Shown: positions 33,928 to 41,786 of the stretch, in pieces | Numbering within the stretch: position 1 is the first letter of the stretch | Layout of the letters: the number at the start of each line of letters is the position of its first letter | Assembly: GCA_010909165.1 (NCBI GenBank) | Contig: VJWM01000044.1 | Location: forward strand, 744,001 to 808,000 | DNA: 64,000 nt | Direction of reading: 5' to 3' | DNA from: Anthoceros angustus | Lineage: Eukaryota > Plantae > Anthocerotophyta | The notes under the pieces: generated by a model | Database searches by the model: none | Told to the model about the DNA's origin: nothing | What the model saw: only the letters and a program-made list of their open reading frames with translations | Position numbers and translations under genes: made by a program

Positions 33928-34310
33928 CACTCAACTCGCTCTTACGAGCCTCAGTGCGGTGCGTGGACGTTTTTACCTCCGGAAGACCTCTGAACAGTCA
34001 TCTGCTACCTGCTCACAACTTATGGAAGTACCCGGCATGACACTTGGCCTAGTAACCGCAGCATGTAGCTTATGATCGAACAGGAATTTCATCATTCCAC
34101 GGTTTCCGAATAGGCGTGGTTTCAACTTGATGAACGTCCCCTCCTTGTAGCAGTTATCAAATGTTGTCGTTACAAAGTCTATTGTATGTTCGTGAATTCC
34201 AATCCCCTTTTACCTGAGTGGTTAGATTCGTAAGTTGTAAAACGTCATGCCCACCTATACCAGGTCTGAACTGTTGAGGGACAGACCAGGCAGAAGAATC
34301 GTCTGCATGG

Positions 34311-36348
34311 TTAAAGCATGGCTTTTATCTGTACACCGGTGTCCTGCTCCCTTTTAGTGTCCTTTAGAGTGTCGGCCACATGCGCAACAACCCCTGCCCC
34401 TTCGTAGTGCATCCACTCGTGCTTCACCTGCAGCGGACAAGCAAACAACTGACTACGTACACCCACATTCAAGCTTCTGCTGACGAATCACGGACGATAA
34501 TCGGCTTACGTGAATATTGTTATGGGCCAGGTAGGGCCACAAAGTAGCATGAAAGCTCACATCCACCTTTCGCCAGCCAACTCGCTGCAAGCCTTTGATC
34601 ATTTCCTCTGCATGCCACACAGCTGATGAGAGCCACCGACTACCAGGACAGCACAGCCAGCCGACCATTCCCTTGGGCAGCAATTAACTTCTAACCTTCC
34701 AGCTTGTCATGATAAGAAGCTTCGGTCTGGCTAGTTGGAGTGGTCTGTGCGGCCTCCTTGGCTTTAGCACCGTCTTCCCCGAAGCTGGGGGAACTGCTCT
34801 TCACTGGAGCGCAATCAACCACCCTCACCACGTGCTTGTACCCCTTCAATGACTGCTTGGGAGGCTGGACGAATAGCGTTGCGTTGCATGCGAACCGCTT
34901 TATTTCTCAGAAATCGATACTAAGAACCTGCAAAGGTTTGGTTACAGAACGGGATCGCACCTTAACCTCGGTTTCTCTCCGGATTGACGAGGTGCGCCAG
35001 CCTACCAAATCTGGGACAAGTCAAGTCAAGGAGACCCTACTCTTTGCAGCTTAGTCTCAGGCAGCTAGCTTGTTCAACCATGGGCTGTGCAGCAAGGATA
35101 CGATCGTAGCTCACATTCGCGTACAGCACCCGCAATTTGAAAGCCCGCAATGCCGATCTGCAGCATGACACAGCAACAGAAACGCCTTTCAGGGCCAATC
35201 AAGTAGAAGCAGAGGAGAGGAGAGGAGAGGAGATGAGAGGAAAACGGAAAAGGGGAAAGGGGCAATAATGAAGCCCACATCAACGCACATGAATTTGCCC
35301 TCCTCGGCATCTGAAGCCATCCGCAAGAGAAGAGGTGGGTCTTTAGCTTTTCCATCTGTCAGAAAAAGTTGTCGTCCAGTGCGTCCGACTAGCAGAGGAG
35401 CCAGGGGCGGCACAAGCTTCTCCAGGACAGGGACCCCTAGGAGGATGGGTAGCTGGGCAGGTCAATTACATCAACGTGGTGTGTGAACTCCAGTCCAAGA
35501 AAGAGGATTCAGACGGTAAAACTGCGTTACATACACGCACTCCCTCACCTGGTTCTTTCCCCTCACTCCAAGATGTGGGGTGGCGAGAGTGATGAGGGTG
35601 ATGGGTTGCAGTCCCGCAATGGTGCCAAGAGGCCCATGCCTCTCATTCTTGCCGTTGCCATCACGAAGCGCTGCAGGTTCGTACAAATCAGCAATCGCGT
35701 ATCGGGTAAAGAGGCCTCCCAGCGAGTGCGCCACAAACGAGATCTTCTTCAGGCTAGGATTCTTGGTGACAACCTGGCGAATCTGCACGGTGAATGATAA
35801 AAACCCAGTGATTCACATCTTGCTCCATCTTCCTCTCGGGTGACAGCGCAACAATTCAGAGTGCATGGAACACAAGCACATGAGGAGAATCACCTCATCC
35901 GCGAGACGTTTTCCCGAGGTGTCGATACCAGTAAGAGTCTGGAGATACGAGTTGACACTGCTAGCTGTGAAGCAGCAGTGAGCCAATATGTTAGCAAGAC
36001 AAGCCCACATCCGATACACAACCATAAGCGATGAAGCAGCCAGACATGCCATAAGCATCTCACCATGGATTAGGTAGCTGGTGCCCAGTTTACCCGTCAG
36101 CTCTCCTTGCACGTATCTCCAGTCCTTCGCGCTGGATGCAAAGGATTCATTCATACAGACCCCCTTCTGGCCATGATGATGCACCTGCTACAGGACGGCT
36201 GTGGAGCATACCTGGCAAGAATTCCGTGGACAAGCACTAAGAGATGGTCGGGTAGTGCATCGGAGCCTTGGGTCTTCACAACCCCATCCACACTCCGACT
36301 CATCGCAGACATGGAAACATGAATTCCTGCCTTCCTGCTGCCAGCCAT
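34311..36348 (-). CDS. DUF676 (putative lipase/serine esterase, ROG1-like) alpha/beta hydrolase; 5' end uncertain
   Basis: PDHLLVLVHGILA, TGIDTSGKRLADE, KISFVAHSLGGLFTRYAI (nucleophile elbow), TLATPHLGVRG, GRTGRQLFLTD, GWRKVDVSFH, AHNNIH|VKHEWMHYEGAGVVAHVAD. Confidence 0.9.
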
Positions 36349-37655: not shown

Positions 37656-40600
37656 CTACATAGGGGGGTCTTCTTGTCGAGGCACATCCCTGATGATACG
37701 CCAGGGTCCGGAAGCTGTCCCAACCCTGTGAGACAGACAGAGAGGAGAGTTCATGGGGTGAAGTGGAGAGTGTGGCATCAAAGGAGGAGACGACGACAGC
37801 GAAGGAGGAATGTGAACCAGCCTAGTTACCTGGCGAAGCCTGCCACCATTCGCAAGGTCATGACGACCGTCAAGCCAATCCAGACTCCCACCAGGCCAAA
37901 TGCCCGAGGCGCCAAAAGGAGGACAAGGATCGACGGGATCGCTGTCAACATCTGCAATTACAATGCGTGACGTTGTAAGCCCTGCCGTTCAAATAGACTC
38001 AAAACTTGGAGAGGTACTTGAGAGACACAAACCATGGTGTATGCCGCGTAAGCGAAGTCGGAAGCTCCATAGTGCAAGCCATCGAAGACAAATGCGAGTG
38101 CATTGATGGGTTGCGTGAAAGCAACGAACTGTTGGAAAGCGATACACCAACAAAATCACTTAGCACCATGGATGATCAATCTCAAAGCCGAGGGATAGAA
38201 GCAGGCTCATACCGGGATCAGATAAGGAATAATTTCCAGAACGCCAGCATCAGTCGTGAACAGCCCGGCCATGGGGCCGGTCCCAAAACCTAGAATAATG
38301 GCAACCACAATTCCAAAAGCCAAACCCATCTGTGCAAATCCAGTACGAGGAAGTCAGAACCAACCAAGTGAAACCGAGCAGCTTGAAAACCAGAGGTACG
38401 GTGTCCCGGATTTCATACCTGCAGTATCCGGATGGCAACCTCCTTCACCCGTTGCGTGTCTCCAGAGGCAAAAGACCCAGCTAAGATTGCCTGCTCAACA
38501 GATACATGCAAACTGAGAGTAAGAACGTCCAGTCTAATACTGGAAACATCACCAGAAGGAAGAAAATCTATGGCTGCCAACGTTGTACCTGACCAGCCAA
38601 TGCCAATGCATCTGAAAGAAGCGACGTTGCTAGCCAAATTTGCAAGCAAATCTGGTGTGCTGCCATTGGAATGGCACCTTGCCTTGCAGCCATGGACGTA
38701 GCCAAGGTCATTGTACATACTATGGCAAGTGTCCGACCAAGTAGAAGCCCACCTGCATTCTCAGCTACATGAGACAAATGCTTTACTGCCACTTTCCGAA
38801 GAAAGATCCATGGAAGTTAACAGTATCATACCTGATTTTAAGAACCGCTCCACTTTCAAGTCACTCCACTTGGGGGGCAACAGAACAACCCGCTGATTCA
38901 GGCTCCACAAGAGCATACCCACAATCAGGTACCTGCCGTAAGGTCAAGCAAGACTTGTGAGAAGTACAAATAAGAGAAGATGTGCAAATCATCTGAGACA
39001 GCACATGTAGAAAACACATAATTCTATGTTCAGTGACTCACTGGGATGCTACAGTCGCAATAGCTGCTCCACTAACCCCATAGTGTAGCGTGAACATTAG
39101 GATAGGATCCAAAATGATATTGGCAATGTTTCCGGCAACTGCAAGGGAAACAGATTTCAGCCAAGCGCAATATACCTAGTAACGGAGGAACAGCAATGCT
39201 AAGATCACCATAATAAATGCTTACCTGTTGAATAGAGAGGCGTCTTGGTATCCTTGAACCCTCGAAAAACACCTTGAACCGCTAGCGAAACTACAACAGC
39301 AGGGGCACCAATAGCCCGTAATGCCAGATATTGTTCAGCAGGAACACGCATAGCGGAGTCCTGCATGACAAGGTAGGCACGCACACCAAAATCATGTCAA
39401 GTGTAACACCAAAGCCCAAGCTGCACCATGTTTGTCAGATGCCTGCTAAATATTGAAAAATAGCTTCAGTCTACTTACAATAGGAATGCCCATAGCATAT
39501 AGAACTGGCCCTGCTGCAAATACAAGGACTGCTGCCTCAAACAACCCAAGACACGAGCCTAAGACCAGTGATGATGAGACTGCCGGCATCATAGGCTTTG
39601 CTGGTCCTGCAGAATTTGTCACAGAGATGCACACAAAGTTGCTCAGGGAAAATACAGACCACAGACAGAATGCGACTTGTACATGTCCAGACAATAGCAT
39701 CAAGCAACAACGCAGCAAACTTACCGGTCGCCTTCAAAAGGGACTCCCTCTCCACTTCTAGCGATCCAGGAGATGCAACTTGATCCAACTCCATACTTTT
39801 ATTTGACTTTTCCACGGCTTCATCTTCGGCCACAAATGATGTGGTAACATTCAACAGAGGGATATTGAACATCTTAGAGACGAGATTGAATATGGAGATG
39901 GAGACACCAACAGCTGCCAGCTCCACTGGACCTGAATCGACAGAATTTACGCACAAGTGCATCAGCTTGTCTGTTTAACAGGACGGGAGCCTCAACAAAA
40001 CTTGTACAGTCGGAAGATAAGAAATGGCATCCTCAATGGGAAACTTCTAGCAATCGCATTTTCACTTCTCTTGACTCTGCTGCTTGGCTAAGAGAACCTA
40101 AGACACAAGGCCGCGACTGTTTGCAACTCTAACTCATCAAGCAGACAAGCCAACCAATACCAAAGGCACCAAATGCCAGTCACAAGCAGAAACATTCAGG
40201 CCAGTGCACAAGAGGAGAAATTAAGAAAGCATGAAAGCAATAGGTGAGGGCTTGATGGCAGTAGACACATGTCTGACACTATTTCCAATACCTATTCGTC
40301 CGATGAAGGCGGAGTCGACCAAAGATGCAAGAGGGTCGGCCGCCAGGGCAAGAACAGCAGGCAAAGCAATGACGGCAATCTCCATGCCAAGCTCATCATT
40401 CCTGAACGCATCGCTGGCAGAACATAAAAATTGCACAAGAGTGTCAACAGAGCTCATTTTCGTTTGCGTAGGGCCTGAGGCTCGCCGGGGAGGCTATGGA
40501 TGGTTTCTACCAGAGCAGCCCGTCCTACTAATGTAGTACCTATTCTCCCTACGTATGCAGTCTCCACAATCTGCGCCGCTGGATCAGCAACCTGAGCTAG

Positions 40601-41786
40601 AATAGCTGGCACAGCAAGAGCAGCAATCTCCCTCCCAACATCGTTGGTCTTGAAAATGTCAAGCAGCGCGCAACTGACGTTCATGCAGGACGACAACTTG
40701 TGTCAGAGGGATGCCAAAATAGAGACACCGTTCTGGTAGAAGTAGCACGCTCTCTGTTGCTCTAGCCTGCCACAGTCAGTGGCCAGTGACGGCTTGCCAC
40801 TGGGAGCTGCACCCAGCTCAGCCTCTCTGCCGAGCAAGATGCTTTACAATTCTGTACCAAAGACCCAGGAATCCCGTGAGTTATCAAGGGTTAATATCAT
40901 GTACCGGGCACTGTGAAAGAGGCCACCGAGAGGACCCCTGCGGTCATCGAAAAGGAAAGGCGACGCATCCGTTCCGTCTGCACCCTCCTGAGTATCCAAA
41001 CGAGCTATCACAGGCTCCGTATTCGTCCTCCGCACACGCGCTGAGCTAAAACCGCCGTGTTTCCGCCTGAAACCCCATCGCACATCATGGAAAACCCTGC
41101 CACTGCATCCTAATTGTCCTCTATCCTCTCCTTGGAAACTTCGTTCCCTTACAAAACCCCTGTTTCTATTCCTGGCCCGGGCCGCAGCCCCCTGGCCGAA
41201 CGCTGGCTGTTCACAGCTCCTGCCATGGCATGTCAACGGGAATCCAGCCGGTTTGGGAGCAGAAACGTGCGAATCCCGGACACCTGCAGCAGAAACAGAA
41301 CACCGAACTCGTCAGGCCCTGGCCATTCCGATTAACTCCGCTACCTCACCAATCATTCTCCATCCCCAGGGCAAGCGAAAAAAAACAGGCTCAGTCCATA
41401 GACCTACTATTCGACCTCAAGCTCAGCTGCGACATTCCTCTCTAAGCAGCAAGTCCACGGAAACGGCTGGACGAAACAACAAGAGCAATGCAGCGAGAGA
41501 CAAGGCACCCCAGATGCAGCTCAGCAGTCAAGGCAATGCCAGGCAGCCAACAGAGCATGAAACACGACTAGATCCGTCCGGCAGCAAGGATCGGCTCCGG
41601 AGTGTGCCAGAGCCACCTCAAATCCCCGCTGCACAAGCAGAGGTGGTGGCTTCTTTCGAGGAGAATGAGGAAACCGGCACAACAAGAGCAGAGACAGCGG
41701 ACGCAGGGCAGCAGGACAGTCAGATGCGGAGCAAAGAAAGACGCACCCGAGGGAGCAAGGGGAGGAGGGCGGAGGGGCAGAGCCAT
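37656..41786 (-). CDS. MATE/DETOXIFICATION transporter of the DTX42-45 clade with predicted transit peptide; contains two alternative TM1 exons
   Basis: GPVELAAVGVSISIFNLVSKMFNIPLLNVTTSFVAED, QGVFRGFKDTKTPL, MAAHQICLQIWLATSLLSDALALAGQ, QPINALAFVFDGLHYGASDF, GTASGPW. Exon 1 (41786-41747) is tentative. Confidence 0.92.

What the first reader, a model, noticed from the sequence alone, without database searches (positions are those of the whole stretch)
40292..40673. Mutually exclusive homologous exons switch TM1 of a MATE transporter between DTX45-like and DTX42/43/44-like forms
Seen: two tandem minus-strand exons encode the same segment. Exon A 40673-40540 (134 nt): CALLDIFKTNDVGREIAALAVPAILAQVADPAAQIVETAYVGRI. 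Exon B 40413-40292 (122 nt): DAFRNDELGMEIAVIALPAVLALAADPLASLVDSAFIGRI. Both have AG/GT borders, start in phase 2 and end in phase 1, matching the upstream donor (40905, phase 2) and downstream acceptor (39931, phase 1). Including both or neither shifts the frame, so exactly one must be used. Both are stop-free yet strongly diverged, implying an old duplication under selection. Established: TM1 of DinF-like MATEs carries the conserved cation/H+-coupling Asp, and mutually exclusive exons are rare in plants. From memory, Arabidopsis DTX45 has 'METAYIGRLG' whereas FRD3/DTX42/44 have '[VI]DTAF[VI]G', mirroring A (E) and B (D). Inference: one gene yields two transporter types that angiosperms encode as separate paralogs, possibly an ancestral splicing switch later resolved by gene duplication.
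Basis: partly seen in the sequence, partly recalled or inferred. Interest (0 to 1): 0.88.

Follow-up and report, generated by a model that had tools for sequence, protein, structure and literature searches.

The report
Ancient either-or exon pair in MATE transporter
A probable hornwort's membrane-transporter gene carries two old, diverged copies of the exon for its first membrane helix, only one of which can be used per protein; liverwort and moss relatives have the same pair, and other plants seem to have repeatedly split it into two separate genes.

Summary
Exons A (40673-40540, 134 nt) and B (40413-40292, 122 nt) lie in tandem on the minus strand. They have AG/GT borders and identical phases, and are 50% identical as protein. 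Using both or neither breaks the frame.

Exon A is intact in a second hornwort, where it is under purifying selection (dN/dS 0.22, p about 0.003). An A-like exon also lies upstream of a 122-nt B exon in the liverwort Calypogeia and in a Sphagnum gene, where it carries a 1-nt frameshift.

A tree of helix 1 alone separates A exons, DTX45-type genes and Closterium from B exons and DTX42/43/44-type genes (97/96). The rest of the protein rejects a single DTX45-type clade (AU p 4e-67), and DTX44 and DTX45 bodies are sisters. This fits an old exon pair resolved several times by gene duplication and loss of one exon from each copy.

The swap changes the main proton-binding Asp of helix 1 to Glu.

There is no RNA proof that A is spliced to exon 3. 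One RNA contig from the related hornwort joins B to exon 3 and retains A with the A-B intron.

The scan noted either-or exon pairs in other genes of this genome, but not in this gene.

The parts
40905..41311 (-). Upstream coding exon, of which only the 3' part is certain. The open frame ends in the donor 40905|GT and leaves 2 nt of a split codon. The 5' end and the start codon are not determined, because this open stretch holds no ATG.
   Evidence: The 'PL.GLF' motif just before helix 1 is shared with Riccia P0031 and Calypogeia P0159. The donor is conserved in L002.
40674..40713 (-). Conserved last 40 nt of intron 1, which is the acceptor region of exon A. Its pyrimidine tract is weak.
   Evidence: It is 83% identical to L002, against 51% for the rest of intron 1. 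A similar TTGTYGYCCTGC motif lies upstream of the Calypogeia A-like exon (read by eye).
40540..40673 (-). Exon A, 134 nt: alternative helix 1 of the DTX45 type (Q, Q, E, Y at the four diagnostic sites).
   Evidence: It has the same length and borders in L002, with dN/dS 0.22. It groups with type-ii helix 1 sequences.
40414..40539 (-). Intron between A and B, 126 nt and unusually conserved. It holds an ATG in frame with exon B.
   Evidence: It is 77% identical to L002, against 51-56% for the flanking introns. It is retained in RNA contig L001. The in-frame ATG is present only in the two hornworts.
40292..40413 (-). Exon B, 122 nt: alternative helix 1 of the DTX42/43/44 type (L, S, D, F), with both helix-1 Asp residues.
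   Evidence: It is 85% identical to Riccia P0031. A 122-nt exon is also found in L002, Calypogeia L006 and Sphagnum L008. RNA contig L001 shows B spliced to exon 3.
39932..40291 (-). Intron between exon B and exon 3. It is poorly conserved.
   Evidence: 56% identity to L002.
39725..39931 (-). Exon 3, shared by both forms: helix 2 plus a variable loop. Acceptor AG|39931.
   Evidence: It was the query, and its helix 2 is of the DTX44-like kind.
37659..39601 (-). Remaining shared exons of the MATE gene (helices 3-12 and the C-terminus).
   Evidence: Mapped exon by exon with Riccia P0031 and the related hornwort cDNA L001.

Best explanation
The gene is a DinF-type plant MATE transporter, related to the citrate-MATE / DTX42-45 group. 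Its first membrane helix is encoded twice, by two tandem exons that arose from a very old exon duplication. Each exon shifts the frame by the same amount, so a full-length protein needs exactly one of them. Exon 1 is joined either to A or to B, and the chosen exon is joined to exon 3. Using both or neither gives an early stop, and such an mRNA is probably removed by nonsense-mediated decay. Exon B gives the DTX42/43/44-type helix, which carries the helix-1 Asp that pairs with a helix-5 Asp as the main protonation site. Exon A gives the DTX45-type helix, with that Asp replaced by Glu and three neighbouring cavity residues changed, so the two proteins should differ in proton coupling or substrate handling. 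The pair predates the split of hornworts, liverworts and mosses. In several lineages the gene was duplicated and each copy kept one exon, which produced separate DTX45-type and DTX44-type genes. What is shown: the anatomy, the frame logic, conservation and selection in hornworts, the pair in three bryophyte lineages, and the conflict between the helix-1 tree and the body tree. What is inferred: present-day use of exon A, NMD of the wrong forms, and the functional difference.
For: Anatomy and frame. In the second hornwort (L002) both exons have the same lengths and AG/GT borders. For exon A dS is 0.49, dN is 0.105 and omega is 0.22; the binomial p is 0.001-0.005 and the simulation p is 0.003. 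The A-B intron (77% identity) and the last 40 nt of intron 1 (83%) are conserved, against 51-56% for other intron sequence. This is the usual mark of regulated alternative exons. Calypogeia fissa L006/L007 has a 146-nt A-like exon with the same phases, a 115-nt intron and a 122-nt B exon. The donors ATAG|GTACT and ATAG|GTATTGG and the B acceptor ATGTTCTGCCAG are shared with the hornworts. Sphagnum L008 has an A-like exon 151 nt upstream of a 122-nt B exon. The helix-1 tree splits 30 type-i sequences, the 2 hornwort B exons and Mesotaenium from 16 type-ii sequences, the 4 A exons and 4 Closterium-type sequences (3 named Closterium, 1 unnamed Logan protein), with support 97/96. On the body tree the starred branches force at least 4 changes of helix-1 type, and none of 200 bootstrap trees makes type ii one clade. 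Sphagnum type ii is sister to Sphagnum type i (95/88), and seed-plant DTX44 and DTX45 form one clade (100/100). The AU test rejects a single type-ii clade (delta lnL 179, p 4e-67). On function, HvAACT1 D99 in helix 1 (the Asp of the VDTAF motif, PfMATE D41) pairs with D296 in helix 5 as the main protonation site, and D99A lowers transport (PMC12358922). P0160 matches HvAACT1 at E 7e-142.
Against: No transcript with A joined to exon 3 was seen. The single RNA contig available (L001, related hornwort) joins B to exon 3 and carries A only together with the retained A-B intron. The acceptor of A has a weak pyrimidine tract. The related hornwort has Gln instead of Glu at the key site of exon A. The Sphagnum A-like exon has a 1-nt frameshift and no acceptor in the right phase, and the Calypogeia A-like exon is strongly diverged. 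On the 35 helix-1 columns, a hornwort-only origin of A and B is disfavoured but not formally rejected (AU p 0.07). Riccia and one Physcomitrium gene have no A exon. Whether hornworts also have a dedicated DTX45-type gene could not be checked.
Confidence: 0.62

Rival explanations
1. Exon A is an unused relic in this hornwort. Only B is ever spliced in, and A survives by chance or through very recent loss of use.
For: Only the B-to-exon-3 junction was seen in RNA. A has a weak pyrimidine tract. The key Glu is Gln in the relative. The Sphagnum copy is frameshifted.
Against: Between the two hornworts dS is 0.49 but dN only 0.105, and a simulation of 22 random substitutions gives p 0.003 for so few amino-acid changes without a stop. 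Length, phase and both splice sites are kept. The flanking intron sequence is conserved. The DTX45-type residues have been kept since before hornworts and liverworts split.
Confidence: 0.14
2. Exon A acts as a regulatory poison exon. Its inclusion together with B, or retention of the A-B intron, gives a premature stop and lowers output of the B protein. A is not translated into a working transporter.
For: Including both exons gives a stop at the last codon of B. The RNA contig L001 carries A, the intron and B together, and there the frame of A stops inside the intron. The intron sequence around A is conserved.
Against: A poison exon needs no constraint at the amino-acid level, yet dN/dS is 0.22. 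It also needs no retention of the four DTX45-type cavity residues, nor the same phase as B across three bryophyte lineages. Dedicated genes that use only the A-type helix exist, so this helix works in a protein.
Confidence: 0.1
3. The region is an alternative 5' end. Some transcripts start near exon A, read through the A-B intron, and are translated from the ATG inside that intron. This would give a B-type protein without the N-terminal (probably transit) peptide.
For: L001 begins 17 nt inside exon A, and the ORF called on it (P0160) starts at the intronic ATG. That ATG and its open frame are present in both hornworts.
Against: Of the 4 substitutions in those 15 codons, 3 change the amino acid (read by eye), so the stretch does not look coding. 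Calypogeia and Sphagnum have no in-frame ATG there. The idea does not explain protein-level selection on exon A. It could coexist with the main explanation.
Confidence: 0.08
4. The DTX45-like residues of exon A arose by convergence after a bryophyte or hornwort-specific exon duplication, and DTX45-type genes elsewhere arose independently several times.
For: The AU test does not formally reject a hornwort-only A+B clade on 35 columns (p 0.07). The four diagnostic residues line one cavity and could co-evolve.
Against: This needs the same four-residue combination to arise at least 4 times on the body tree and again in the A exons of three bryophyte lineages. The helix-1 tree has a 97/96 branch separating the two types. 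The Sphagnum type-i gene, which is sister to the Sphagnum type-ii gene, still holds an A-like exon.
Confidence: 0.06

Closest known systems
Mutually exclusive exons born from tandem exon duplication (animal examples such as Dscam and ion-channel genes)
   Same: The exons are adjacent and homologous, have equal phase and encode the same structural segment. Double inclusion or double skipping breaks the frame. The surrounding intron sequence is conserved.
   Different: This case is in a land plant, where such pairs are rarely documented. No competing RNA structure was found. At 126 nt the intron between the exons is not too short to be spliced, so exclusivity may rest on frame and decay alone. 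Use of exon A is not yet shown.
Subfunctionalization of splice forms after gene duplication (Lambert et al. 2015, PMC4417111, vertebrates)
   Same: An alternatively spliced ancestor appears to be replaced by two genes, each fixed for one form. Here these are the DTX45-type and DTX44-type genes.
   Different: Here the resolution seems to have happened at least four times in different plant lineages, while three bryophyte lineages keep the unresolved or half-resolved gene.
HvAACT1 / FRD3-type citrate MATE transporters (crystal structure 9l7l, PMC12358922)
   Same: The DinF-like fold is the same: P0160 matches at E 7e-142. Exon B keeps both helix-1 Asp residues and both Pro residues, and the helix-5 Asp partner of D99 is kept.
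   Different: The hornwort gene has Asn at the D289 position. It also offers a second helix 1 with Glu (Gln in the relative) in place of D99. The substrate is unknown.
Angiosperm DTX44 and DTX45 (annotated as chloroplastic MATE proteins)
   Same: The helix-1 motifs of B and A match those of DTX44 and DTX45 respectively.
   Different: In angiosperms these are two genes whose bodies are sisters. DTX45 has also changed helix 2 and lost the helix-5 Asp. The hornwort has one shared body of the DTX44-like kind.

Membership tests
MATE transporters (Pfam PF01554), DinF-like plant group DTX42-45 | MatE domain and twelve-helix architecture | tested here: met
   Single exons are too short to pass on their own: exon 8 scores 15.8 bits against a cut-off of 24.9. 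The related hornwort's protein P0160 carries PF01554 and matches HvAACT1 at E 7e-142. All exons map to Riccia P0031.
MATE transporters, DinF-like | Helix-1 Asp (PfMATE D41 / HvAACT1 D99) paired with a helix-5 Asp | tested here: met
   This is met for the exon B form: the Asp of the VDSAF motif, and the Asp of ILDP in helix 5 (residue roles from PMC12358922). Exon A has Glu here, and Gln in L002.
Mutually exclusive exon pair | Adjacent homologous exons with identical phases and valid splice sites | tested here: met
   The same holds in L002 and in Calypogeia L006.
Mutually exclusive exon pair | Inclusion of both or of neither destroys the reading frame | tested here: met
   134 nt and 122 nt are both 2 mod 3. 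The resulting stops are shown.
Mutually exclusive exon pair | Mature transcripts contain A alone or B alone | not testable with these tools
The one RNA contig (L001) shows B joined to exon 3 and shows no A-to-exon-3 junction.
DTX45-type helix 1 | Gln, Gln, Glu and Tyr at the four sites where the DTX42/43/44 type has Leu, Ser, Asp and Phe | tested here: met
   Exon A has Q, Q, E, Y and exon B has L, S, D, F. The tree split has 97/96 support. L002 has Q, Q, Q, Y.
DTX45 gene clade | The rest of the protein groups with DTX45-type genes | tested here: not met
   DTX45-type genes are not one clade on the body alignment (AU p 4e-67). The hornwort body branches near the base of the land-plant sequences, and its helix 2 is DTX44-like.

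The most novel reading that the evidence does not exclude
A single MATE gene with an either-or pair of helix-1 exons existed in the ancestor of land plants, and perhaps earlier, since Zygnematophyceae show both helix types. The separate DTX45-type and DTX44-type genes of mosses, lycophytes, ferns and seed plants would then be at least four independent resolutions of that one splicing switch, each by duplication followed by loss of one exon from each copy. On this reading hornworts and leafy liverworts still run the original switch, and Sphagnum is caught half-way.
Probability: 0.45. Interest if true: 0.82.

Novelty: new member of a known kind. Interest (0 to 1): 0.72.

Why it matters
Documented mutually exclusive exons are rare in plants, and I found no paper on one in a MATE transporter. 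If real, this pair swaps the helix that holds the main proton-binding residue of a DinF-type MATE, so it is a natural experiment on how coupling is tuned. It would also change how the DTX42-45 family tree is read: the DTX45 type would be an exon state inherited from a splicing switch, not a single old gene clade. Finally, it would give a plant example, with living intermediates, of alternative splice forms being turned into separate genes again and again. The scan's own notes list other candidate either-or exon pairs in this genome, so hornworts may be an unusually good place to study this process.

Tried and rejected
I did not trim or alter the stretch and stopped there.

2. Pfam on single exon peptides gave nothing for A, B or exon 3, because they are too short.

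3. A protein search with the open stretch around exon A found nothing. Hornwort proteins are almost absent from that collection, so the blank says little.

4. Docking/selector RNA pairing between the introns: duplex energies were no better than shuffles (z about 0; -1.65 at best). RNAalifold of the A-B intron in two hornworts gave no compensatory pair. A short helix I saw by eye between the two acceptor regions is not supported.

5. Steric exclusion is rejected as the cause of exclusivity, because the 126-nt intron is long enough to be spliced.

6. I searched my protein set for pairs with the same body but a different helix 1, which would be annotated isoforms. There were none; the best pair was 56% identical.

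7. Genomic loci for Marchantia, Selaginella, Sphagnum fallax and the Diphasiastrum type-ii gene were not on record.

The natural protein P0160 of the related hornwort stood in for the gene body, and the exon peptides were used one at a time by reference.
Full report
**Observation**

On the minus strand the window holds an intron-rich MATE transporter gene, running from above 41.1 kb down to about 37.66 kb.

- Exon A is 40673-40540 (134 nt) and exon B is 40413-40292 (122 nt). Each is preceded by CAG and followed by GT.
- Each starts with one base that completes a codon and ends with one base that opens one. This fits the upstream donor (40905|GT, two bases pending) and the downstream acceptor (AG|39931).
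- The peptides are 20/40 identical and 32/40 similar without gaps (E 3e-10).
- The DNA flanks do not align, so the duplication is old.
- With both exons included, B is read out of frame and ends in TAG at its last codon. With neither, exon 3 stops after 18 codons. A full-length protein therefore needs exactly one of the two.

**What the gene is**

Single exons are too short for Pfam. A phmmer search of 1.84 billion representatives with exon 3, by reference, returned plant MATE proteins and fragments. The nearest named full-length relatives are:

- Riccia and Marchantia ('MATE family, citrate exporter');
- Physcomitrium 'DETOXIFICATION 42';
- Selaginella 'DETOXIFICATION 44'.

The closest relative of all is P0160. 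This protein was called on a 1,713-nt spliced Logan RNA contig (L001). An 11.5-kb genomic contig (L002) from the same project carries the orthologous gene and the same downstream DUF676 gene. P0160 matches the barley citrate transporter HvAACT1, a solved structure, at E 7e-142. Earlier notes of this scan call the genome a probable hornwort. I did not test that directly, but the body of P0160 branches outside mosses, liverworts and vascular plants.

Exon peptides were used singly by reference, and P0160, a natural sequence, stood in for the gene body.

**Is exon A alive?**

In L002 both exons have the same lengths (134 and 122 nt) and the same AG/GT borders.

- Exon A differs at 22 of 132 codon-aligned bases but at only 9 of 44 residues. 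dS is 0.49, dN is 0.105 and dN/dS is 0.22.
- A binomial test gives p 0.001-0.005. Placing 22 random substitutions gives so few amino-acid changes without a stop in only 0.3% of trials.
- Exon B has dN/dS 0.32.
- Intron sequence around the pair is conserved well above background. The A-B intron is 77% identical and the last 40 nt of intron 1 are 83% identical, against 51-56% for the rest of intron 1 and for the intron after B. That pattern is typical of regulated alternative exons.

Against use of A:

- The only RNA evidence, L001, is colinear with the genome from 17 nt inside exon A, through the A-B intron and exon B. It is then spliced from B to exon 3, and ten further introns are spliced out as well.
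- L001 thus shows that B is used and that the A-B intron is selectively retained. This is what a splicing intermediate of the 'B' route would look like. It shows no junction from A to exon 3.
- The ORF call P0160 starts at an ATG inside that intron. The ATG is shared by the two hornworts but absent in Calypogeia and Sphagnum. Three of the four substitutions in those 15 codons change the amino acid (read by eye), so I do not take it as coding.
- Read-level tests were not possible.

**The pair is much older than hornworts**

- *Calypogeia fissa* (liverwort). Both gene copies (L006, L007) have an A-like exon of 146 nt with the same phases, followed by a 115-nt intron and a 122-nt B exon. The donor ATAG|GTACT after A, the donor ATAG|GTATTGG after B, and the 12 bases ATGTTCTGCCAG before B are shared with the hornworts. 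One annotated Calypogeia protein (P0159) includes both copies by using an AG inside exon B. This is an annotation artefact that gives two first helices.
- *Sphagnum troendelagicum* (moss). The type-i gene L008 has an A-like exon ending in the same ATAG|GTACT donor. It is followed by a 151-nt intron and again a 122-nt B exon. This A copy has a 1-nt frameshift and no acceptor in the right phase.
- *Genes without the pair.* A separate Sphagnum gene (L009) has only the A-type exon. Riccia (L005) and one Physcomitrium gene (L003) have only B.

**Two helix types, one mixed-up gene tree**

Across 200-odd relatives, helix 1 comes in two clear kinds.

- Type i has Leu, Ser, Asp and Phe at four sites. 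It is found in proteins named DTX42, 43 and 44 and in exon B.
- Type ii has Gln, Gln, Glu and Tyr at the same sites. It is found in proteins named DTX45 and in exon A. The related hornwort's exon A has Gln at the third site.

A careful tree of the 35 helix-1 columns puts all 30 type-i sequences, both hornwort B exons and Mesotaenium on one side of a 97/96 branch. All 16 type-ii sequences, the four A exons and the four Closterium-type sequences (3 named Closterium, 1 unnamed Logan protein) fall on the other side. Forcing the hornwort A and B exons into one clade costs 16.8 lnL units, but with so few columns the AU p is 0.07. That is disfavoured, not formally rejected.

The rest of the protein (430 columns, helix 2 to the C-terminus) tells a different story.

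- Sphagnum type ii sits inside the moss clade, sister to the Sphagnum type-i gene that still holds the A relic (95/88).
- Seed-plant DTX44 and DTX45 form one clade (100/100), apart from DTX42/43.
- Starred branches force at least four changes of helix type.
- No bootstrap tree makes type ii one clade. The AU test rejects that clade (delta lnL 179, p 4e-67).

The simplest reading is this. The ancestor had both exons in one gene, and that gene was duplicated several times. Each time, one copy kept A and the other kept B. Convergence of four residues at least four times, or wholesale gene conversion of bodies but not of helix 1, are the alternatives, and they seem less likely given the living tandem pairs.

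**What the switch would do**

In HvAACT1 the helix-1 Asp D99 (PfMATE D41) pairs with the helix-5 Asp D296 as the main protonation site. D92 and P93 form a second site and the hinge of helix 1. D92A, D99A and P93A each lower citrate efflux (PMC12358922).

- Exon B keeps D92, P93 and D99.
- Exon A keeps D92 and P93 but has Glu at D99 (Gln in L002). It also changes three nearby residues.
- The shared body keeps the D296 partner. Most dedicated type-ii genes have lost it: Phe or Leu in DTX45, Ser, Gly or Phe in fern-like and other sequences, and Glu in Sphagnum.

I infer that the two forms differ in proton coupling, pH response or substrate. This is inference only.

**Mechanism of choice**

I found no support for competing RNA structures. 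At 126 nt the intron is long enough to be spliced, so exclusivity at the protein level probably rests on frame plus decay of the wrong forms. The acceptor of A has a weak pyrimidine tract and that of B a U-rich one. B is therefore likely the default, and A would need activation.

**Novelty and verdict**

- Full-text searches found no report of mutually exclusive exons in a plant MATE, nor any exon-level history of DTX44/45.
- The general phenomena are known: exon pairs from tandem duplication, and splice forms turned into paralogues (PMC4417111).
- I therefore file this as a new member of a known kind, though a rich one. It is an old pair with unresolved, half-resolved and resolved states in living plants.
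- The anatomy and the comparative evidence are strong. The missing piece is a transcript that joins A to exon 3.

Noticed in passing
L006:7471-7853 (Calypogeia fissa, protein P0159): The deposited protein model includes both helix-1 copies in tandem by using an AG inside exon B. This gives a 13-helix protein and is very likely an annotation artefact of an unrecognised either-or pair. The sister copy P0158 skips the A-like exon.
   Followed up: yes
L008:4654-4761 (Sphagnum troendelagicum): The A-like exon upstream of the B exon has a 1-nt deletion (CTT-CC-ATT) that shifts the frame, yet its 3' half is 72% identical to the helix 1 of Sphagnum's dedicated type-ii gene. This is either a very recent loss or an assembly error.
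   Followed up: partly
L001:1-372 against L002:4861-5232: The RNA contig of the related hornwort keeps the A-B intron while ten downstream introns are spliced out. The ORF caller then started the protein at an ATG inside that intron. The same ATG is at window 40457-40455.
   Followed up: partly
helix 5, window about 39139-39041 (minus strand); alignment: The helix-5 Asp that pairs with the helix-1 Asp is kept in the hornwort and in most type-i genes, but is replaced in most dedicated DTX45-type genes (Phe, Leu, Ser, Gly or Glu). It is also replaced in Marchantia and Riccia (Cys) and in Adiantum (Val).
   Followed up: partly
proteins P0104, P0300, P0311 (Closterium); P0280 (Mesotaenium); P0281 (Spirogloea): Zygnematophycean algae already show both helix-1 kinds. 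Closterium has the Gln/Glu kind, and Mesotaenium and Spirogloea have the Ser/Asp kind. The two types may therefore predate land plants. Their gene structures were not examined.
   Followed up: no
window about 34300-36200 (minus strand); L002:9617-10299: A DUF676 (putative lipase-like) gene lies just downstream of the MATE gene in both the window and the related hornwort contig, so the neighbourhood is syntenic.
   Followed up: no
proteins P0151 (Miscanthus, 1038 aa) and P0152 (Escallonia, 850 aa): These deposited proteins contain two complete helix-1/helix-2 units far apart. They are probably fused models of tandem MATE genes and are unrelated to the exon pair.
   Followed up: no
window 40905-41311 and upstream to about 41800: The open frame of the upstream exon holds no ATG in either hornwort, so at least one more 5' coding exon must exist. 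An 'MALPL...' open frame at about 41786 is a candidate but was not tested.
   Followed up: partly
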